Source: Macrostomum hystrix
Taxonomy: Eukaryota > Animalia > Platyhelminthes
NCBI GenBank assembly: GCA_950097015.1
Contig: CATNEN010000001.1
Location: 23,498,001-23,562,000, forward strand
Reading direction: 5' to 3'
DNA length: 64,000 nucleotides
Part shown: positions 44,621-52,124 of the stretch, piece after piece
How the letters are laid out: each line of letters starts with the position of its first letter
Position numbering within the stretch: the stretch's first letter is position 1
Position numbers and translations under genes: made by a program
The notes under the pieces: generated by a model
Told to the model about the DNA's origin: nothing
The model's input: only the letters and a program-made list of their open reading frames with translations
Databases searched by the model: none

Positions 44621-44729
44621 AGTCTGAAAAAATAAGTGTAAAAAAAAACTTCTGGCTTGTTAGGGGCAGTTAAAAACTGCTTGAAAATTTGTGCGCGAAA
44701 GCATCTTTAAAGACGACGAAAATATCTAT

Positions 44730-47700
44730 CGAGGTAGATTCTTGTGGGTGATGTAGACACTCGGGGTAGATTCTTGCGGGAGATGTAAACACTCGAGGTA
44801 GATTCTTTGGGGAGATGTAAACACTCGAGGTAGATTCTTGCGGGAGATGTAGACACTCGGGGTAGATTCTTGCGGAAGATGTAGACACTCGAGGTAGATT
44901 CTTGCGGGAGATGTAAACACTCGAGGTAGATTCTTTGGGGAGATGTAGACACTCGAGGTAGATTCTTGCGGGAGATGTAAACACTCGAGGTAGATTCTTT
45001 GGGGAGATGTAGACACTCGAGGTAGATTCTTGCGGGAGATGTAAACACTCGAGGTAGATTCTTGCGGGAGATGTAGACACTCGAGGTAGATTCTTGCGGG
45101 AGATGTAAACACTCGAGGTAGATTCTTGCGGGAGATGTAGACACTCGAGGTAGATTCTTGTGGGAGATGTAGACACTCGAGGTAGATTCTTGCGGGAGAT
45201 GTAAACACTCGAGGTAGATTCTTGCGGGAGATGTAGACACTCGAGGTAGATTCTTGTGGGAGATGTAGACACTCGAGGTAGATTCTTGGGGGAGATGTAG
45301 ACACTCGGGGTAGATTCTTGTGTTAGAGGTGCCATATGAACACTCGGATAGATTCATGTGGGAGGTATTGTCATTCAGGGTAGATTTCTTGTGGGAGGTG
45401 TGGACAGTCGGGGTAGATTCTTGTGGGAGGTGTGGACAGTCGGGGTAGATTATTGTGGGAGGTGCAGTCACTCGGGGTAGATTATTGTGGGAGATGTAGA
45501 CACTCGAGGTAGATTCTTGCGGGAGATGTAAACACTCGAGGTAGATTCTTGCGGGAGATGTAGACACTCGAGGTAGATTCTTGTGGGAGATGTAGACACT
45601 CGAGGTAGATTCTTGTGGGAGATGTAGACACTCGAGGTAGATTCTTGTGGGAGATGTAGACACTCGAGGTAGATTCTTGTGGGAGATGTAGACACTCGAG
45701 GTAGATTCTTGCGGGAGATGTAGACACTTGGGGTAGATTCTTGCGGGAGATGTAGACACTCGAGGTAGATTCTTGTGGGAGATGTAGACACTCGAGGTAG
45801 ATTCTTGCGGGAGATGTAGACACTCGAGGTAGATTCTTGCGGGAGATGTAGACACTCGAGGTAGATTATTGTGGGAGATATAGACACTCGAGGTAGATTC
45901 TTGCGGGAGATGTAGACACTCGAGGTAGATTCTTGTGGGAGATGTAGACACTCGAGGTAGATTCTTGCGGGAGATGTAGACACTTGGGGTAGATTCTTGC
46001 GGGAGATGTAGACACTCGAGGTAGATTCTTGCGGGAGATGTAGACACTCGAGGTAGATTCTTGTGGGAGATGTAGACACTCGAGGTAGATTCTTGGGGGA
46101 GATGTAGACACTCGGGGTAGATTCTTGGGGGAGATGTAGACACTCGAGGTAGATTCTTGGGGGAGATGTAGACACTCGAGGTAGATTCTTGTGGGAGATG
46201 TAGACACTCGAGGTAGATTCTTGGGGGAGATGTAGACACTCGGGGTAGATTCTTGTGTTAGAGGTGCCATATGAACACTCGGATAGATTCATGTGGGAGG
46301 TATTGTCATTCAGGGTAGATTTCTTGTGGGAGGTGTGGACAGTCGGGGTAGATTCTTGTGGGAGGTGTGGACAGTCGGGGTAGATTATTGTGGGAGGTGC
46401 AGTCACTCGGGGTAGATTATTGTGGGAGATGTAGACACTCGAGGTAGATTCTTGCGGGAGATGTAAACACTCGAGGTAGATTCTTGCGGGAGATGTAGAC
46501 ACTCGAGGTAGATTCTTGTGGGAGATGTAGACACTCGAGGTAGATTCTTGTGGGAGATGTAGACACTCGAGGTAGATTCTTGTGGGAGATGTAGACACTC
46601 GAGGTAGATTCTTGTGGGAGATGTAGACACTCGAGGTAGATTCTTGCGGGAGATGTAGACACTTGGGGTAGATTCTTGCGGGAGATGTAGACACTCGAGG
46701 TAGATTCTTGTGGGAGATGTAGACACTCGAGGTAGATTCTTGCGGGAGATGTAGACACTCGAGGTAGATTCTTGTGGGAGATGTAGACACTCGAGGTAGA
46801 TTCTTGGGGGAGATGTAGACACTCGGGGTAGATTCTTGGGGGAGATGTAGACACTCGAGGTAGATTCTTGGGGGAGATGTAGACACTCGAGGTAGATTCT
46901 TGTGGGAGATGTAGACACTCGAGGTAGATTCTTGGGGGAGATGTAGACACTCGGGGTAGATTCTTGTGTTAGAGGTGCCATATGAACACTCGGATAGATT
47001 CATGTGGGAGGTATTGTCATTCAGGGTAGATTTCTTGTGGGAGGTGTGGACAGTCGGGGTAGATTCTTGTGGGAGGTGTGGACAGTCGGGGTAGATTATT
47101 GTGGGAGGTGCAGTCACTCGGGGTAGATTATTGTGGGAGATGTAGACACTCGAGGTAGATTCTTGCGGGAGATGTAAACACTCGAGGTAGATTCTTGCGG
47201 GAGATGTAGACACTCGAGGTAGATTCTTGTGGGAGATGTAGACACTCGAGGTAGATTCTTGTGGGAGATGTAGACACTCGAGGTAGATTCTTGTGGGAGA
47301 TGTAGACACTCGAGGTAGATTCTTGTGGGAGATGTAGACACTCGAGGTAGATTCTTGCGGGAGATGTAGACACTTGGGGTAGATTCTTGCGGGAGATGTA
47401 GACACTCGAGGTAGATTCTTGTGGGAGATGTAGACACTCGAGGTAGATTCTTGCGGGAGATGTAGACACTCGAGGTAGATTCTTGTGGGAGATGTAGACA
47501 CTCGAGGTAGATTCTTGGGGGAGATGTAGACACTCGGGGTAGATTCTTGGGGGAGATGTAGACACTCGAGGTAGATTCTTGGGGGAGATGTAGACACTCG
47601 AGGTAGATTCTTGTGGGAGATGTAGACACTCGAGGTAGATTCTTGGGGGAGATGTAGACACTCGGGGTAGATTCTTGTGTTAGAGGTGCCATATGAACAC

Positions 47701-49207
47701 TCGGATAGATTCATGTGGGAGGTATTGTCATTCAGGGTAGATTTCTTGTGGGAGGTGTGGACAGTCGGGGTAGATTATTGTGGGAGGTGTGGACAGTCGG
47801 GGTAGATTATTGTGGGAGGTGCAGTCACTCGGGGTAGATTATTGTGGGAGATGTAGACACTCGAGGTAGATTCTTGCGGGAGATGTAAACACTCGAGGTA
47901 GATTCTTGTGGGAGATGTAGACACTCGAGGTAGATTCTTGCGGGAGATGTAGACACTTGGGGTAGATTCTTGCGGGAGATGTAGACACTCGAGGTAGATT
48001 CTTGTGGGAGATGTAGACACTCGAGGTAGATTCTTGGGGGAGATGTAGACACTCGGGGTAGATTCTTGGGGGAGATGTAGACACTCGAGGTAGATTCTTG
48101 GGGGAGATGTAGACACTCGAGGTAGATTCTTGTGGGAGATGTAGACACTCGAGGTAGATTCTTGGGGGAGATGTAGACACTCGGGGTAGATTCTTGTGTT
48201 AGAGGTGCCATATGAACACTCGGATAGATTCATGTGGGAGGTATTGTCATTCAGGGTAGATTTCTTGTGGGAGGTGTGGACAGTCGGGGTAGATTATTGT
48301 GGGAGGTGTGGACAGTCGGGGTAGATTATTGTGGGAGGTGCAGTCACTCGGGGTAGATTATTGTGGGAGATGTAGACACTCGAGGTAGATTCTTGCGGGA
48401 GATGTAAACACTCGAGGTAGATTCTTGTGGGAGATGTAGACACTCGAGGTAGATTCTTGCGGGAGATGTAGACACTTGGGGTAGATTCTTGCGGGAGATG
48501 TAGACACTCGAGGTAGATTCTTGTGGGAGATGTAGACACTCGAGGTAGATTCTTGCGGGAGATGTAGACACTCGAGGTAGATTCTTGCGGGAGATGTAGA
48601 CACTCGAGGTAGATTCTTGTGGGAGATATAGACACTCGAGGTAGATTCTTGCGGGAGATGTAGACACTCGAGGTAGATTCTTGTGGGAGATGTAGACACT
48701 CGAGGTAGATTCTTTGGGGAGATGTAGACACTCGAGGTAGATTCTTGCGGGAGATGTAGACACTCGAGGTAGATTCTTGTGGGAGATGTAGACACTCGAG
48801 GTAGATTCTTGGGGGAGATGTAGACACTCGGGGTAGATTCTTGTGTTAGAGGTGCCATATGAACACTCGGATAGATTCATGTGGGAGGTATTGTCATTCA
48901 GGGTAGATTTCTTGTGGGAGGTGTGGACAGTCGGGGTAGATTCTTGTGGGAGGTGTGGACAGTCGGGGTAGATTATTGTGGGAGGTGTGGACAGTCGGGG
49001 TAGATTATTGTGGGAGGTGCAGTCACTCGGGGTAGATTATTGTGGGAGATCTAGACACTCGGGGTAGATTATTGTGGGAGGTGCAGTCACTCGGGGTAGA
49101 TTATTGTGGGAGATCTAGACACTCGGGGTAGATTATTGTGGGAGATCTAGACACTCGGGGTAGATTATTGTGGGAGATCTAGACACTCGGGGTAGATTAT
49201 TGTGGGA
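44730..49207. repeat. 4.5-kb satellite of 32-bp units (GAGGTAGATTCTTGYGGGAGATGTAGACACTC) organised in higher-order repeats
   Basis: A divergent marker block (TTAGAGGTGCCATATGAACAC...) recurs 6 times at spacings of 935, 711, 711, 519 and 647 bp, all differing by multiples of 32. Confidence 0.96.
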
Positions 49208-49821
49208 TGTATAGTCCCTGAGTTGCGAGCTTCAATAATTTTTTGGAGTCTTATTGAGAAAATACTTGTGATATAGAAAGCGTGAAAATACAGTAGCAGA
49301 AATCTTTAAAGTCCTCTCGGAGCACCAATTTGTCGACGAATTTCCAGCAATTACACGCTCACTGTCTTTGTAGGACCAGCTGCCGGAGCATGCCAGCCCA
49401 CAGGTAAACAGAAAATTTTTAAACACAGAAAGACTATACTTAAGGGACAAAAAATTGTGCAATTCGAGCTCAAAGGTGACTTCGGCGCAGCCTTGCATCG
49501 ATGGACTTTAAAAGCAAGCGAATTTTCGCTCAAAGGAATCGCACCAGCCATCCTCAAAGAAATTGTTATGCCCAATGGCTTCGTCTTCCAAAATTTGTTT
49601 ATAAAAGTAGGCTCCAAATCCTGCCAATAAATCCAAGGACAGACTGTCTTACTTTTACTCCGCCTCAGCGATCAAGAGTTAAAACCAAGGATCAACGTCA
49701 GAGGGCCTTTTGGAATATAATAATAGGCAAGTATTAGAATTGATATTTCACAATTAAGGAAGTGAAACATACCATCAACATAATTCCTCCATCCCGCAAT
49801 TCTAGACTCAACAAGCCTGCC

Positions 49822-50488
49822 ATGATGTGCAACCGCTTGCTCTTAGTGATTCTGTGCCTGCAGGCGTGCGCAGTCGAACTTTCGCACGAATGTTTCATGG
49901 AAAACTGCGCTCCGGGCGGCAAGAAGCGCTCCGCTGATCCCTTGCTGGGATTTTCCTCCCTAGGAGCTAACGATGGTAAGCGGAGGCTGATCAATCCAGA
50001 TAAAATAACTTCATAATTCTGGTCAATGTGCCCATACAGTTGAATGATTACCACGTCGTTCGCATTCGCATACCACTACCATTAATCAATAGGTAGTCCA
50101 AGTGAAGCCATTGTCAAGCACTGTCCTAGCTGCTCGCACGGTTGGGGCCGCTGCTTCGGCCCAACCATTTGCTGCCATCCCAGCGGCGGCTGCCGAGTTG
50201 GCTTCGGTCCTGACACCCTCGCCTGTCGCCGACTGCCCAGAGGAGTTCTATTGAGCTGTTCCGCTTCCAGCTGCTTGAATGGCCGCGGTCGGTGCGCCTC
50301 GCGTGGAGTCTGCTGCACCGCCGGTAGGTGATGCTTTATTATTGTCTAATTTTTGCTCTGTATACAAAACACCCGACCGATGTAAGAAGTCTCCCAGCAT
50401 TCTCCAACAATCGTCAAAGTAATCAACATGCCGAACATTTGCAGATGCCTGCCAAGTTGCCGCCGAGTGCAACAATATCGGGCTCTGA
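49822..50488 (+). CDS. Oxytocin/vasopressin-family neuropeptide precursor (signal peptide, CFMENCAPG, GKKR, neurophysin); exons 49822-49975, 50093-50323, 50445-50488; 142 aa
   Basis: Hydrophobic signal LLLVILCLQACA; C-x4-C-x2-G followed by G-K-K-R. The spliced neurophysin CPSCSHGWGRCFGPTICCHPSGGC...C...C..CLNGRGRCASRGVCCTA|DACQVAAEC has all 14 Cys, and intron 2 lies just after the second CC as in OT/VP genes. Confidence 0.92.
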
Positions 50489-52124
50489 CTGGATCAGTAC
50501 CAACCAAGCTCAGCAACTGCCTGCTGATGCCTAATGATTTAATTTTTCTGTTGAATTTTTCAAAGTACAGTGCAAGTCCATGCTATCTAAAAATATTAGC
50601 CTATACAGAAAAACAATTTCCTTTTATCGGTGCAGAGCCGACACTGCCACCCACACACTGGCTGGTTCTCTTTTGAAATAAATGCAACCGTTTTTTCAAA
50701 AAAACACCACACAGTCTGTTTGATGTTTTTACGTAAAATTCTTCAGATTCTTTGAAAGCTGAGAAGTCGAAGTCAAGATTTTTTCCATTGCGCCGATTAA
50801 GGACATTGTGTGAAGGGTAGAATCTGTCTAGGTTTGGGATTTGAATGCGCAAAAATTGCGGCCACAAAACCATAAAGAGAGACTGCAATGTCGGATGATA
50901 GACAGGTGGAACAGACCACGCGTGGAGGGTGGTGAAGAACATGTAACGAGTCTGCCAAACGAGAGCATTTTTAGACTGGCGAACTGTCCAGCGTCTCCAT
51001 TAGACAGTTGGTACCGACGCATGTCAAGAAATTTCAAGTAACGATACCCTGCCTTTTTAATAAAATTGTAGCCTGCATGCATCTTAGAAGAAGCATGAAA
51101 TCATCGCATTTTCAGAGTAACCTTTGCTGGCTTGATTGTAAGAGGGCCCAGCTGAAAAGCCCGTCCACCATCTTGTGCCGGGATACCAACGTGATCCGGA
51201 CCGAAAGCTACTGCCCTGAACTTCTTTAAGAAGTCCTGCTGCTCACTTTGCAGGGCCCGATCAGGAGCGCAAGTCCGAATTCGAAAGTACGTGGACTGCA
51301 TCCTGAGCGACACCAGATAGCCTTACACCGACAATGGACTGTATTTCAACTGCCTCCCAAGGTTCCCCAGTTTCACCTGCACCAGATTTTGACGCTAAAA
51401 TCTGCGACTATCAAACAGCATAAATTGTTGTTTGTCGTTGTTCTTATACGAGCTATACAAAAGCAACAGCTGTGTCGTTACTGAATTTTAGCTTCAGGCA
51501 TACAAGTGGTGTCAACGTTTGTATATTTCTTAATCTTCCGCGTGCCGTTCACAGCTTTCCGGCGTTTCATGCTCAAATGCTAGGAATTTTAGTCTTGACA
51601 GCACACCCAAAACCCTTGTCTGTGCGCAACTCGTGAACTTCGCCCAAGCCACCCCTGCCAATGAGGCGAACAGAATAACAGATCCAGCAATGGAGGACAA
51701 CCAGGTCTTATCGGGATTCAACGATCAAGCGAGTTGAAACGAGCGTCATGGCAACGAAATGAGAATTTATTGCCGAAGCAGGTATTTTATTGCCGAGAAA
51801 TAGTAATTTATTTTACAATAAGCCTGTCAAAAATACTACTATACGTTTTCAAAACTAGAAGCCTAATGCTTAAGGAAGAACCGCTATTCAACGAGACTAG
51901 GAAAATATGGTATCATTGACTACGCGTGCACAAACGCTGATAATGAGCCTCCGTAATACGAGCTCATGCTTGCTTTGTCTCGAACCTTATTATGTAATGA
52001 AAATTTTATAATTTGTATGTTTATTTTTAAATTCGCTGTAAAATGAAAATGCGTCATAAAACTGACACTGCGCTTCTCATACTGTACACTGCACTCATAC
52101 CAGTTAGACACGATGTACAGCCTG

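What the first reader, a model, noticed from the sequence alone, without database searches (positions are those of the whole stretch)
49822..49929. Highly divergent, possibly N-terminally extended oxytocin/vasopressin-like peptide (CFMENCAPG-amide)
Seen: the peptide at 49891-49917 reads CFMENCAPG, followed by GKKR. Known: OT/VP-family nonapeptides almost always have Pro7, a non-acidic residue 4, a GKR processing site, and a Cys1 directly after the signal peptide. Here residue 4 is Glu, residue 7 is Ala with Pro shifted to 8, and the residue before Cys1 is Glu (SHE|C), a poor signal-peptidase -1 residue. A better site lies at ACA|V. Inference: the mature hormone may be VELSHECFMENCAPG-amide, an acidic extended member of the family needing its own receptor.
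Basis: partly seen in the sequence, partly recalled or inferred. Interest (0 to 1): 0.85.

Follow-up and report, generated by a model that had tools for sequence, protein, structure and literature searches.

The report
Divergent flatworm vasopressin/oxytocin-type hormone gene
This is a real, spliced and transcribed gene for a vasopressin/oxytocin-type hormone precursor in a Macrostomum flatworm. It is the most altered of three such genes in the genome, and its hormone may keep six extra residues at its front end, which only chemistry can confirm.

Summary
Window 49822-49929 encodes a signal peptide, a VELSHE spacer, CFMENCAPG and GKKR. It is exon 1 of a three-exon, 142-codon gene whose exons 2-3 encode a 14-cysteine neurophysin (Pfam PF00184, 45.3 bits against a 27.2 cut-off). 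A cDNA-type contig from a second sample of the same species is spliced at exactly the predicted junctions.

The genome matches the published Macrostomum hystrix assembly in size and contig number. It holds three such genes. The other two encode CFVNNCPPG and CFVANCPPG, so Pro8 is not "shifted": the family tail is Pro-Pro-Gly and this copy changed Pro7 to Ala, and also carries Met3 and Glu4. Its neurophysin is 72-76% identical to unannotated M. lignano proteins, so the paralogue predates that split.

The (-3,-1) rule allows signal-peptide cleavage only after Ala15 or Ala17, never before Cys1. The extension is therefore plausible. One paralogue shows a similar spacer. It remains unproven: no SignalP, no mass spectrometry, and no transcript cover of the 5' part.

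Macrostomum vasopressin-type genes were already reported in 2022, by accession only. I found no paper holding this peptide. Four receptor-motif scans found no canonical receptor, which is inconclusive.

The scan also noted a sister gene on another contig (s1-844532) and this gene's neurophysin (s1-849815).

Verdict: new member of a known family, moderate interest.

The parts
49822..49975 (+). Exon 1 (coding part): signal peptide, spacer, nonapeptide, GKKR, linker SADPLLGFSSLGAND and the first base of a Gly codon
   Evidence: Translation. Donor GTAAGC at 49976. Spliced contig junction 49974/5 to 50092/3.
49822..49872 (+). Predicted signal peptide MMCNRLLLVILCLQACA (n-region MMCNR, hydrophobic core LLLVILCL, c-region QACA)
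   Evidence: The (-3,-1) rule is met only after Ala15 and Ala17. This is inspection, not SignalP.
49873..49890 (+). Six-residue spacer VELSHE between the predicted signal-peptidase site and Cys1. It contains no basic cleavage site.
   Evidence: Paralogue C has a comparable HLAEL spacer.
49891..49917 (+). Nonapeptide core CFMENCAPG (Cys1 and Cys6 for the ring)
   Evidence: Aligned with CFVNNCPPG and CFVANCPPG.
49918..49929 (+). GKKR: glycine amide donor plus a basic convertase site
   Evidence: The roles of Gly and Lys/Arg are established knowledge of prohormone processing.
49976..50092 (+). Intron 1, 117 nt, GT..AG, phase 1
   Evidence: Skipped in the run X2 contig. Splice dinucleotides.
50093..50323 (+). 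Exon 2: central neurophysin, 12 of the 14 cysteines
   Evidence: Pfam PF00184 at 45.3 bits against a 27.2 cut-off, E 1.7e-11. Bovine neurophysin II at E 7.7e-6. Translation.
50324..50444 (+). Intron 2, 121 nt, GT..AG, phase 1, two residues after the Cys-Cys pair
   Evidence: Skipped in the run X2 contig. Splice dinucleotides.
50445..50488 (+). Exon 3 coding part: (D)ACQVAAECNNIGL plus stop. Carries cysteines 13 and 14.
50489..50682 (+). 3' untranslated region with AATAAA at 50677-50682
   Evidence: Transcript contig covers up to 50668. AATAAA position.

Best explanation
This is a functional, transcribed paralogue of the vasopressin/oxytocin-type neuropeptide precursor gene in a Macrostomum flatworm, most likely M. 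hystrix. The 142-residue precursor enters the secretory pathway through a 17-residue signal peptide. A prohormone convertase cuts after GKKR, carboxypeptidase removes the basic residues and the remaining Gly is turned into a C-terminal amide. Cys1 and Cys6 close the ring, and the 14-cysteine neurophysin is released alongside. Shown here: the sequence, the gene structure, the splicing, the neurophysin family membership, the existence of two more canonical paralogues and of an M. lignano orthologue. Inferred: the processing steps, and that signal peptidase cuts after Ala17. That cut would give a peptide that first appears as VELSHE-CFMENCAPG-amide. I put about even odds on the six extra residues staying on the secreted product. 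The core differs from its sister genes at three positions (Val3 to Met, Asn/Ala4 to Glu, Pro7 to Ala). This fits divergence after duplication towards a different or altered receptor preference.
For: Sequence and coordinates. Neurophysin: Pfam PF00184 at 45.3 bits against a 27.2 cut-off, and the best solved-structure hits are bovine neurophysin II and I, E 7.7e-6. Splicing: a 537-nt contig in run X2 skips 49975-50092 and 50323-50444 with GT..AG ends. It carries a template-switch adaptor tail (GTATCAACGCAGAGTACGGG), so it is cDNA. Its listed differences from the genome are one synonymous change at 50163 and two 3'UTR changes, plus one unlisted difference in 49914-49974. Paralogues: three PF00184 loci over the cut-off in the genome, with peptides CFVNNCPPG and CFVANCPPG and the same phase-1 intron layout. 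Orthologue: M. lignano proteins P0001, P0008 (PAA80927.1), P0009 and P0010 are 72-76% identical over the neurophysin, and P0009 keeps every cysteine in the alignment. Cleavage site: a (-3,-1) scan allows only Ala15 or Ala17 in this gene, allows the site directly before Cys1 in paralogue B, and allows only Thr18 or Cys19 in paralogue C.
Against: The transcript contig begins at 49914, so the signal peptide, the spacer and most of the nonapeptide are not covered by RNA evidence. No signal-peptide predictor could be run. No peptide chemistry exists. The M. lignano orthologue's first exon could not be retrieved, so conservation of the spacer, Glu4 and Ala7 is unknown. No vasopressin/oxytocin-type receptor was found by four hallmark-motif scans. 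All three neurophysins lack Glu at the position that binds the hormone's amino group in bovine neurophysin (reading).
Confidence: 0.62

Rival explanations
1. Same gene, but the secreted hormone is the plain nonapeptide CFMENCAPG-amide. Either signal peptidase cuts atypically before Cys1, or the VELSHE spacer is removed afterwards by an aminopeptidase, a dipeptidyl peptidase or a cut after Glu.
For: In all described family members the peptide follows the signal peptide directly (review PMC7181382). Paralogue B has a rule-conforming site right before Cys1. The spacers of A and C align with B's c-region, so they could simply be unusual c-regions.
Against: Glu at -1, ten residues beyond the hydrophobic core, breaks the (-3,-1) rule, while a textbook Ala-x-Ala site lies upstream. 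There is no basic site in the spacer. No trimming enzyme of the required specificity is documented for this family, to my own knowledge.
Confidence: 0.28
2. The copy is a drifting duplicate. It is transcribed, but its peptide no longer acts as a hormone. Selection has relaxed on the nonapeptide, and any remaining role lies in the neurophysin-like domain.
For: Three changes at otherwise conserved ring and tail positions. No canonical receptor motif in the genome. The neurophysin lacks the hormone-binding Glu.
Against: Intact reading frame, canonical splice sites, and both ring cysteines, Asn5, Gly9 and the amidation/cleavage site kept. Its neurophysin is the best conserved of the three paralogues against Pfam and bovine neurophysin and is kept in M. 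lignano at 72-76% identity.
Confidence: 0.08
3. Chance open reading frame. No real peptide gene.
For: None beyond the short length of exon 1.
Against: Neurophysin domain over the curated cut-off, an exactly spliced cDNA contig, and paralogues and an orthologue.
Confidence: 0.01

Closest known systems
Vasopressin/vasotocin precursor genes of Macrostomum lignano and platytocin of polyclad flatworms (Kobayashi et al. 2022, PMC8896804)
   Same: Flatworm members of the same family. The paper already states that M. lignano has such genes, citing four accessions. The M. lignano cluster I found (PAA80927.1 and three UniProt fragments) is 72-76% identical to this neurophysin.
   Different: PAA80927.1 is not among the four accessions cited. 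Its gene model lacks the hormone exon, so this paralogue's peptide appears undescribed. No paper in the library holds CFMENCAPG. The polyclad platytocin sequence itself was not readable here because it appears only in figures.
Paralogues B and C in the same genome (G000 C39 about 7686204-7687045, plus strand; C25 about 5082104-5082737, minus strand)
   Same: Same layout: signal peptide, C-F-x-x-N-C-x-P-G, G-K-(K)-R, phase-1 introns and a neurophysin exon over the Pfam cut-off.
   Different: Their peptides are CFVNNCPPG and CFVANCPPG. That is one or two residues away from annelid CFVRNCPPG and tardigrade CFVTNCPPG. Their neurophysins are only 36-37% identical to this one. B has no spacer and C has HLAEL.
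Saccoglossus kowalevskii CFISDCARG-amide
   Same: The one listed family member with Ala instead of Pro at position 7.
   Different: It has Arg8 rather than Pro8 and Asp5 rather than Asn5. No spacer before Cys1 is reported.
Asterotocin CLVQDCPEG-amide (starfish)
   Same: An acidic family member with its own selective receptor, confirmed by mass spectrometry.
   Different: Its acidic residues are at positions 5 and 8, not 4. It has Pro7 and no N-terminal extension.
Terlipressin (triglycyl-lysine-vasopressin) and deamino analogues (own knowledge, not tested here)
   Same: They show that the family's receptors tolerate a blocked, missing or extended amino end at Cys1.
   Different: These are synthetic. 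The extended form acts largely as a prodrug, so a natural extended hormone would be unusual.

Membership tests
Vasopressin/oxytocin-type neuropeptide precursor | N-terminal signal peptide | tested here: met
   MMCNR + LLLVILCL + QACA: a charged n-region, an 8-residue hydrophobic core and an Ala-x-Ala c-region. By inspection only; SignalP was not available.
Vasopressin/oxytocin-type neuropeptide precursor | Peptide with Cys1 and Cys6 (six-residue ring) and a three-residue tail ending in Gly | tested here: met
   CFMENCAPG at 49891-49917. Phe2 and Asn5 are as in many family members.
Vasopressin/oxytocin-type neuropeptide precursor | Peptide lies immediately after the signal peptide | tested here: not met
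   The (-3,-1) rule places the cut after Ala15 or Ala17, six to eight residues before Cys1, and Glu sits at -1 of Cys1. This is rule-based and needs SignalP or mass spectrometry. The feature is usual for the family rather than formally defining.
Vasopressin/oxytocin-type neuropeptide precursor | Gly amide donor followed by a basic cleavage site | tested here: met
   GKKR at 49918-49929. Paralogue C also has GKKR and B has GKR.
Vasopressin/oxytocin-type neuropeptide precursor | Neurophysin domain with 14 cysteines | tested here: met
   PF00184 at 45.3 bits against a 27.2 cut-off. Bovine neurophysin II at E 7.7e-6. 12 Cys in exon 2 and 2 in exon 3.
Vasopressin/oxytocin-type neuropeptide precursor | Three coding exons, with the second intron just after the Cys-Cys pair of neurophysin | tested here: met
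   Spliced contig with junctions 49975|50093 and 50323|50445. Both introns are phase 1. The review states that three coding exons are typical. That the second intron's placement matches vertebrate genes is my own knowledge.
Vasopressin/oxytocin-type neuropeptide precursor | Pro at position 7 | tested here: not met
   Ala7. Known exceptions are Saccoglossus (Ala7) and Ciona (Ser7), so this does not exclude membership.
Vasopressin/oxytocin-type neuropeptide precursor | Neurophysin Glu (bovine Glu47) that pairs with the hormone's free amino group | tested here: not met
   In the HMMER alignment, bovine C-Q-E-E aligns to C-R-R-L. By position after Cys7, paralogues B (Q-A-A) and C (G-A-G) lack it too, whereas the unrelated precursor P0007 has A-A-E.
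Vasopressin/oxytocin-type signalling system | Cognate rhodopsin-type receptor of the VP/OT family in the same genome | tested here: inconclusive
   The FQVLPQ scan gave 4 hits against 3 in the control, none in a receptor-like frame. FQVxPQxxW gave no hit. CxNPWIY gave four exons with SWLPLH, which by my reading are NPY-receptor-like. CW[A/T/S]PFF gave three aminergic-type receptors. No reference receptor sequence could be obtained. Kobayashi et al. also found no clear orthologue in M. lignano.

The most novel reading that the evidence does not exclude
The secreted hormone is the 15-residue, triply acidic VELSHECFMENCAPG-amide. That would be the first natural N-terminally extended member of the vasopressin/oxytocin family. 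It would sit in a lineage whose three neurophysins have all lost the Glu that grips the hormone's free amino end, and whose genome shows no canonical receptor motif. In that reading the whole Macrostomum system (packaging and receptor) has been rewired, with paralogue C (HLAEL-CFVANCPPG) as a second example.
Probability: 0.3. Interest if true: 0.65.

Novelty: new member of a known kind. Interest (0 to 1): 0.42.

Why it matters
Until 2020, reviews listed flatworms as having lost vasopressin/oxytocin signalling. A 2022 study overturned that with polyclads and a passing mention of M. lignano accessions.

Three paralogues in a compact, non-duplicated Macrostomum genome is unusual for an invertebrate, where one gene is the norm. 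One of the three has an altered ring (Met3, Glu4), an altered tail (Ala7) and a probable N-terminal spacer. This gives a tractable case of hormone diversification after duplication in a laboratory flatworm genus where RNAi and in situ methods exist.

If the extension is real, it would bear on how far the free amino end of Cys1 is needed for packaging by neurophysin and for receptor activation. If it is not real, this is simply one more family member.

Tried and rejected
- **The search for homologous proteins on the exon-1 frame.** No candidate shared words with it, so no described protein has this signal peptide and peptide.
- **Searches with the M. lignano fragments.** They returned only their own cluster. 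The four accessions cited by Kobayashi et al. could not be retrieved.
- **phmmer of exon 2 against 1.84 billion representatives.** Apart from the M. lignano cluster, the two short hits (P0006, P0007) are neurophysin-like by their sequences. The four long hits (P0002-P0005) were not pursued; only P0003 carries a name, a bacterial fibronectin type III domain protein.
- **Own-genome protein search with exon 2.** It missed the two paralogues. Its weak second hit (L002) lies in an ankyrin-repeat gene. The Pfam-family search found the paralogues.
- **Run X3, the other species of the same study.** It gave no contig on the gene at 80% likeness or more. This says nothing about presence in that species.
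- **Receptor motif scans.** They found only other receptor classes or non-receptor sequence.
- **Solved-structure search with paralogue B's neurophysin.** It gave only spurious Rab hits. Paralogue C gave weak neurophysin hits.
- **A mini-intron removing VELSHE.** Rejected by eye, because no donor/acceptor pair is far enough apart.

Full report
**Observation.** Window 49822-49929 (+) translates to MMCNRLLLVILCLQACAVELSHECFMENCAPGGKKR. A script placed the parts as follows:

| Part | Coordinates |
|---|---|
| Signal-like segment | 49822-49872 |
| VELSHE | 49873-49890 |
| CFMENCAPG | 49891-49917 |
| GKKR | 49918-49929 |

The frame opens after a stop at 49759-49761 and has no in-frame ATG upstream of 49822.

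**Gene model.**
- Exon 1 runs to 49975, with donor GTAAGC.
- Exon 2 is 50093-50323, with acceptor ATCAATAG and donor GTAGGT.
- Exon 3 starts at 50445, with acceptor ATTTGCAG, and stops at 50486-50488.
- Both introns are phase 1. The exons sum to 429 nt, which is 142 codons plus a stop.
- AATAAA lies at 50677.

**Transcript evidence.**
- Run X2 comes from the same coded organism but another sample. Laying it on 48800-51300 gave one 537-nt contig lying on 49914-49974, 50092-50322 and 50444-50668.
- The two gaps have GT..AG ends. The tool notes that the cut is shiftable by one base, which gives exactly my junctions.
- Its loose 5' tail is GTATCAACGCAGAGTACGGG. From my own knowledge this is the end of a SMART template-switch oligo. 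So X2, although labelled "DNA?", is cDNA. That is an inference.
- The listed differences from the genome are A>G at 50163 (third base of a Pro codon, synonymous) and two changes in the 3'UTR. One further difference in 49914-49974 is not listed by position.
- Limit: the contig starts at 49914. The start codon, signal peptide, spacer and most of the nonapeptide have no RNA cover here. The adaptor at that point most likely marks a truncated cDNA and not the true 5' end.
- No run on record as RNA was offered.

**Family.**
- Exon 2 scores 45.3 bits on Pfam PF00184 (neurohypophysial hormone C-terminal domain, cut-off 27.2, E 1.7e-11).
- Its best matches among all solved structures are bovine neurophysin II and I (E 7.7e-6 and up).
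- Twelve cysteines lie in exon 2 and two in exon 3, the family's 14.
- The second intron sits two residues after the Cys-Cys pair. From my own knowledge, vertebrate genes have it in the same place.
- This is a bona fide vasopressin/oxytocin-type precursor gene.

**Organism.**
- The assembly has 220,453,370 bases in 42 contigs. Those are the figures published for Macrostomum hystrix (about 220 Mb, 42 contigs; PMC10468722).
- The only close proteins in 1.84 billion representatives are from M. lignano, at 76% identity over the neurophysin. The species name is therefore an inference.
- Earlier notes of this scan also call the genome Macrostomum.

| Gene | Location | Start of precursor | Source |
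|---|---|---|---|
| A | this window | MMCNRLLLVILCLQACA-VELSHE-CFMENCAPG-GKKR | |
| B | contig 39 | MNFKPDLILLLPLLLSLHFCNC-CFVNNCPPG-GKR | |
| C | contig 25, minus strand | MLHNTKSLAHLLVLLLATC-HLAEL-CFVANCPPG-GKKR | |

- B and C have the same phase-1 intron after a short linker and after the Cys-Cys pair. I could read B's third exon but could not identify C's.
- A's neurophysin is 36-37% identical to B and C, and 72% identical to M. lignano P0009.
- Gene A is therefore an old paralogue with an orthologue in M. lignano, not a recent or private copy.
- The M. lignano models either start at exon 2 or, for PAA80927.1, carry an unrelated N-terminus. The orthologous hormone exon is thus unannotated there.

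**How divergent is the peptide?**
- Against its sisters, gene A differs at positions 3 (Val to Met), 4 (Asn/Ala to Glu) and 7 (Pro to Ala).
- Pro8-Gly9 is shared with them and with annelid, scallop, crab and tardigrade peptides.
- In the 39-peptide table of a 2020 review, position 4 is never acidic and position 3 is never Met. Position 7 is Pro except in Ciona (Ser) and Saccoglossus (Ala). Acidic family members exist (asterotocin), but with the charges at positions 5 and 8.
- The ring cysteines, Phe2, Asn5, Gly9 and the amidation/cleavage site are all kept.
- GKKR instead of GKR also occurs in gene C and is of no consequence for processing (established knowledge).

**The N-terminal extension.**
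- I applied the classical (-3,-1) rule: small neutral residues at -1, and no charged or large polar residue at -3.
- Gene A qualifies only after Ala15 or Ala17. A cut before Cys1 would put Glu at -1, ten residues past the hydrophobic core.
- Gene B qualifies directly before Cys1.
- Gene C qualifies only after Thr18 or Cys19, which would leave HLAEL or CHLAEL.
- Neither spacer holds a basic site.
- Two of three paralogues are therefore predicted to emerge from the signal peptidase with five to eight extra residues.
It remains a rule-of-thumb prediction. The spacers align with gene B's c-region, so atypical cleavage or later trimming is a live alternative.
- I put the extended form as the main secreted product at about one in two.

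**Neurophysin pocket.**
- In the alignment to bovine neurophysin II, the C-Q-E-E segment, which contains the Glu that pairs with the hormone's free amino group (own knowledge), aligns to C-R-R-L in gene A.
- By position after the seventh cysteine, B (Q-A-A) and C (G-A-G) lack it as well. An unrelated invertebrate-type precursor picked up in the search (P0007, CYLKNCPLG) has A-A-E there.
- The loss noted by the sibling finding s1-849815 is thus lineage-wide and does not track the spacer.
- It does mean that an extension would not cost a salt bridge that is already gone. That is an inference.

**Receptor.** I had no way to bring a reference receptor into the session, so I scanned the genome for back-translated hallmark motifs recalled from the family.

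| Motif | Result |
|---|---|
| FQVLPQ | four hits against three in the control, none in a receptor-like frame |
| FQVxPQxxW | no hit |
| CxNPWIY | four last exons with SWLPLH, which I read as NPY/NPF-receptor-like |
| CW[A/T/S]PFF | three aminergic-type receptors |

This agrees with the published remark that no clear receptor orthologue was found in M. lignano (PMC8896804). It is weak evidence, because motifs may be diverged or split by introns.

**Literature and novelty.**
- The 2020 review listed Platyhelminthes as having lost the system.
- Kobayashi et al. 2022 found platytocin in polyclads and stated that M. lignano has VP/vasotocin precursor genes, citing four accessions. A 2026 review adds nothing on Macrostomum.
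- No paper in the library holds CFMENCAPG, CFMENC, CFVNNCPPG or CFVANCPPG.
- The existence of such genes in the genus is therefore known. This paralogue's peptide, its spacer and the three-gene set appear undescribed.

**Limits.**
- No SignalP, no peptidomics, no DNA from other Macrostomum species, and no RNA cover of the first 92 coding bases.

**Verdict.** This is a real, expressed, divergent member of a known hormone family, one of three in the genome. It has a plausible but unproven N-terminal spacer that it shares in kind with a sister gene.

Noticed in passing
window 44729-49207: A 32-bp satellite of about 139 copies at 90% match ends some 600 bp upstream of the gene's start codon. Its repeats produce the short repetitive ORFs listed at 48881-49131.
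   Followed up: partly
L007 1435-2276 (G000 C39 about 7686204-7687045, +): Paralogue B is a complete three-exon vasopressin/oxytocin-type gene encoding CFVNNCPPG. Its second intron is almost entirely an (ACTG)n-type microsatellite, and a 20-bp array lies upstream. It was noted earlier in the scan as s1-844532.
   Followed up: partly
L010 1518-2151, minus strand (G000 C25 about 5082104-5082737): Paralogue C encodes CFVANCPPG + GKKR, preceded by an HLAEL spacer after the best signal-peptidase site. Exons 1 and 2 are clear, but I could not identify a third exon carrying cysteines 13 and 14.
   Followed up: partly
window 50221-50235; L007 1788-1799; L010 about 1615-1626: All three Macrostomum neurophysins lack Glu three residues after the seventh cysteine, the position of bovine Glu47. 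All three also carry a C-R-R-(R)-L motif, after Cys7 in gene A and after Cys8 in B and C.
   Followed up: partly
L014-L017 (G000 C3:15350999, C24:3081266, C29:1015648, C38:29009756): Four paralogous receptor last exons share SWLPLH...SNCC(V/A)NPWIYCAFS...LRCVS. I read them as NPY/NPF-receptor-like, from recalled motifs only.
   Followed up: no
window 51141-51269: A short multi-copy element. Many contigs of run X1 pile up here with variants, and it is the only part of the laid stretch that the other species' run (X3) matches, with 6 differences in 39 bases.
   Followed up: no
run X2 on window 49914-50668: The run is labelled 'DNA?', but its contig is intron-less and carries a template-switch adaptor tail, so it behaves as a cDNA library.
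   Followed up: yes
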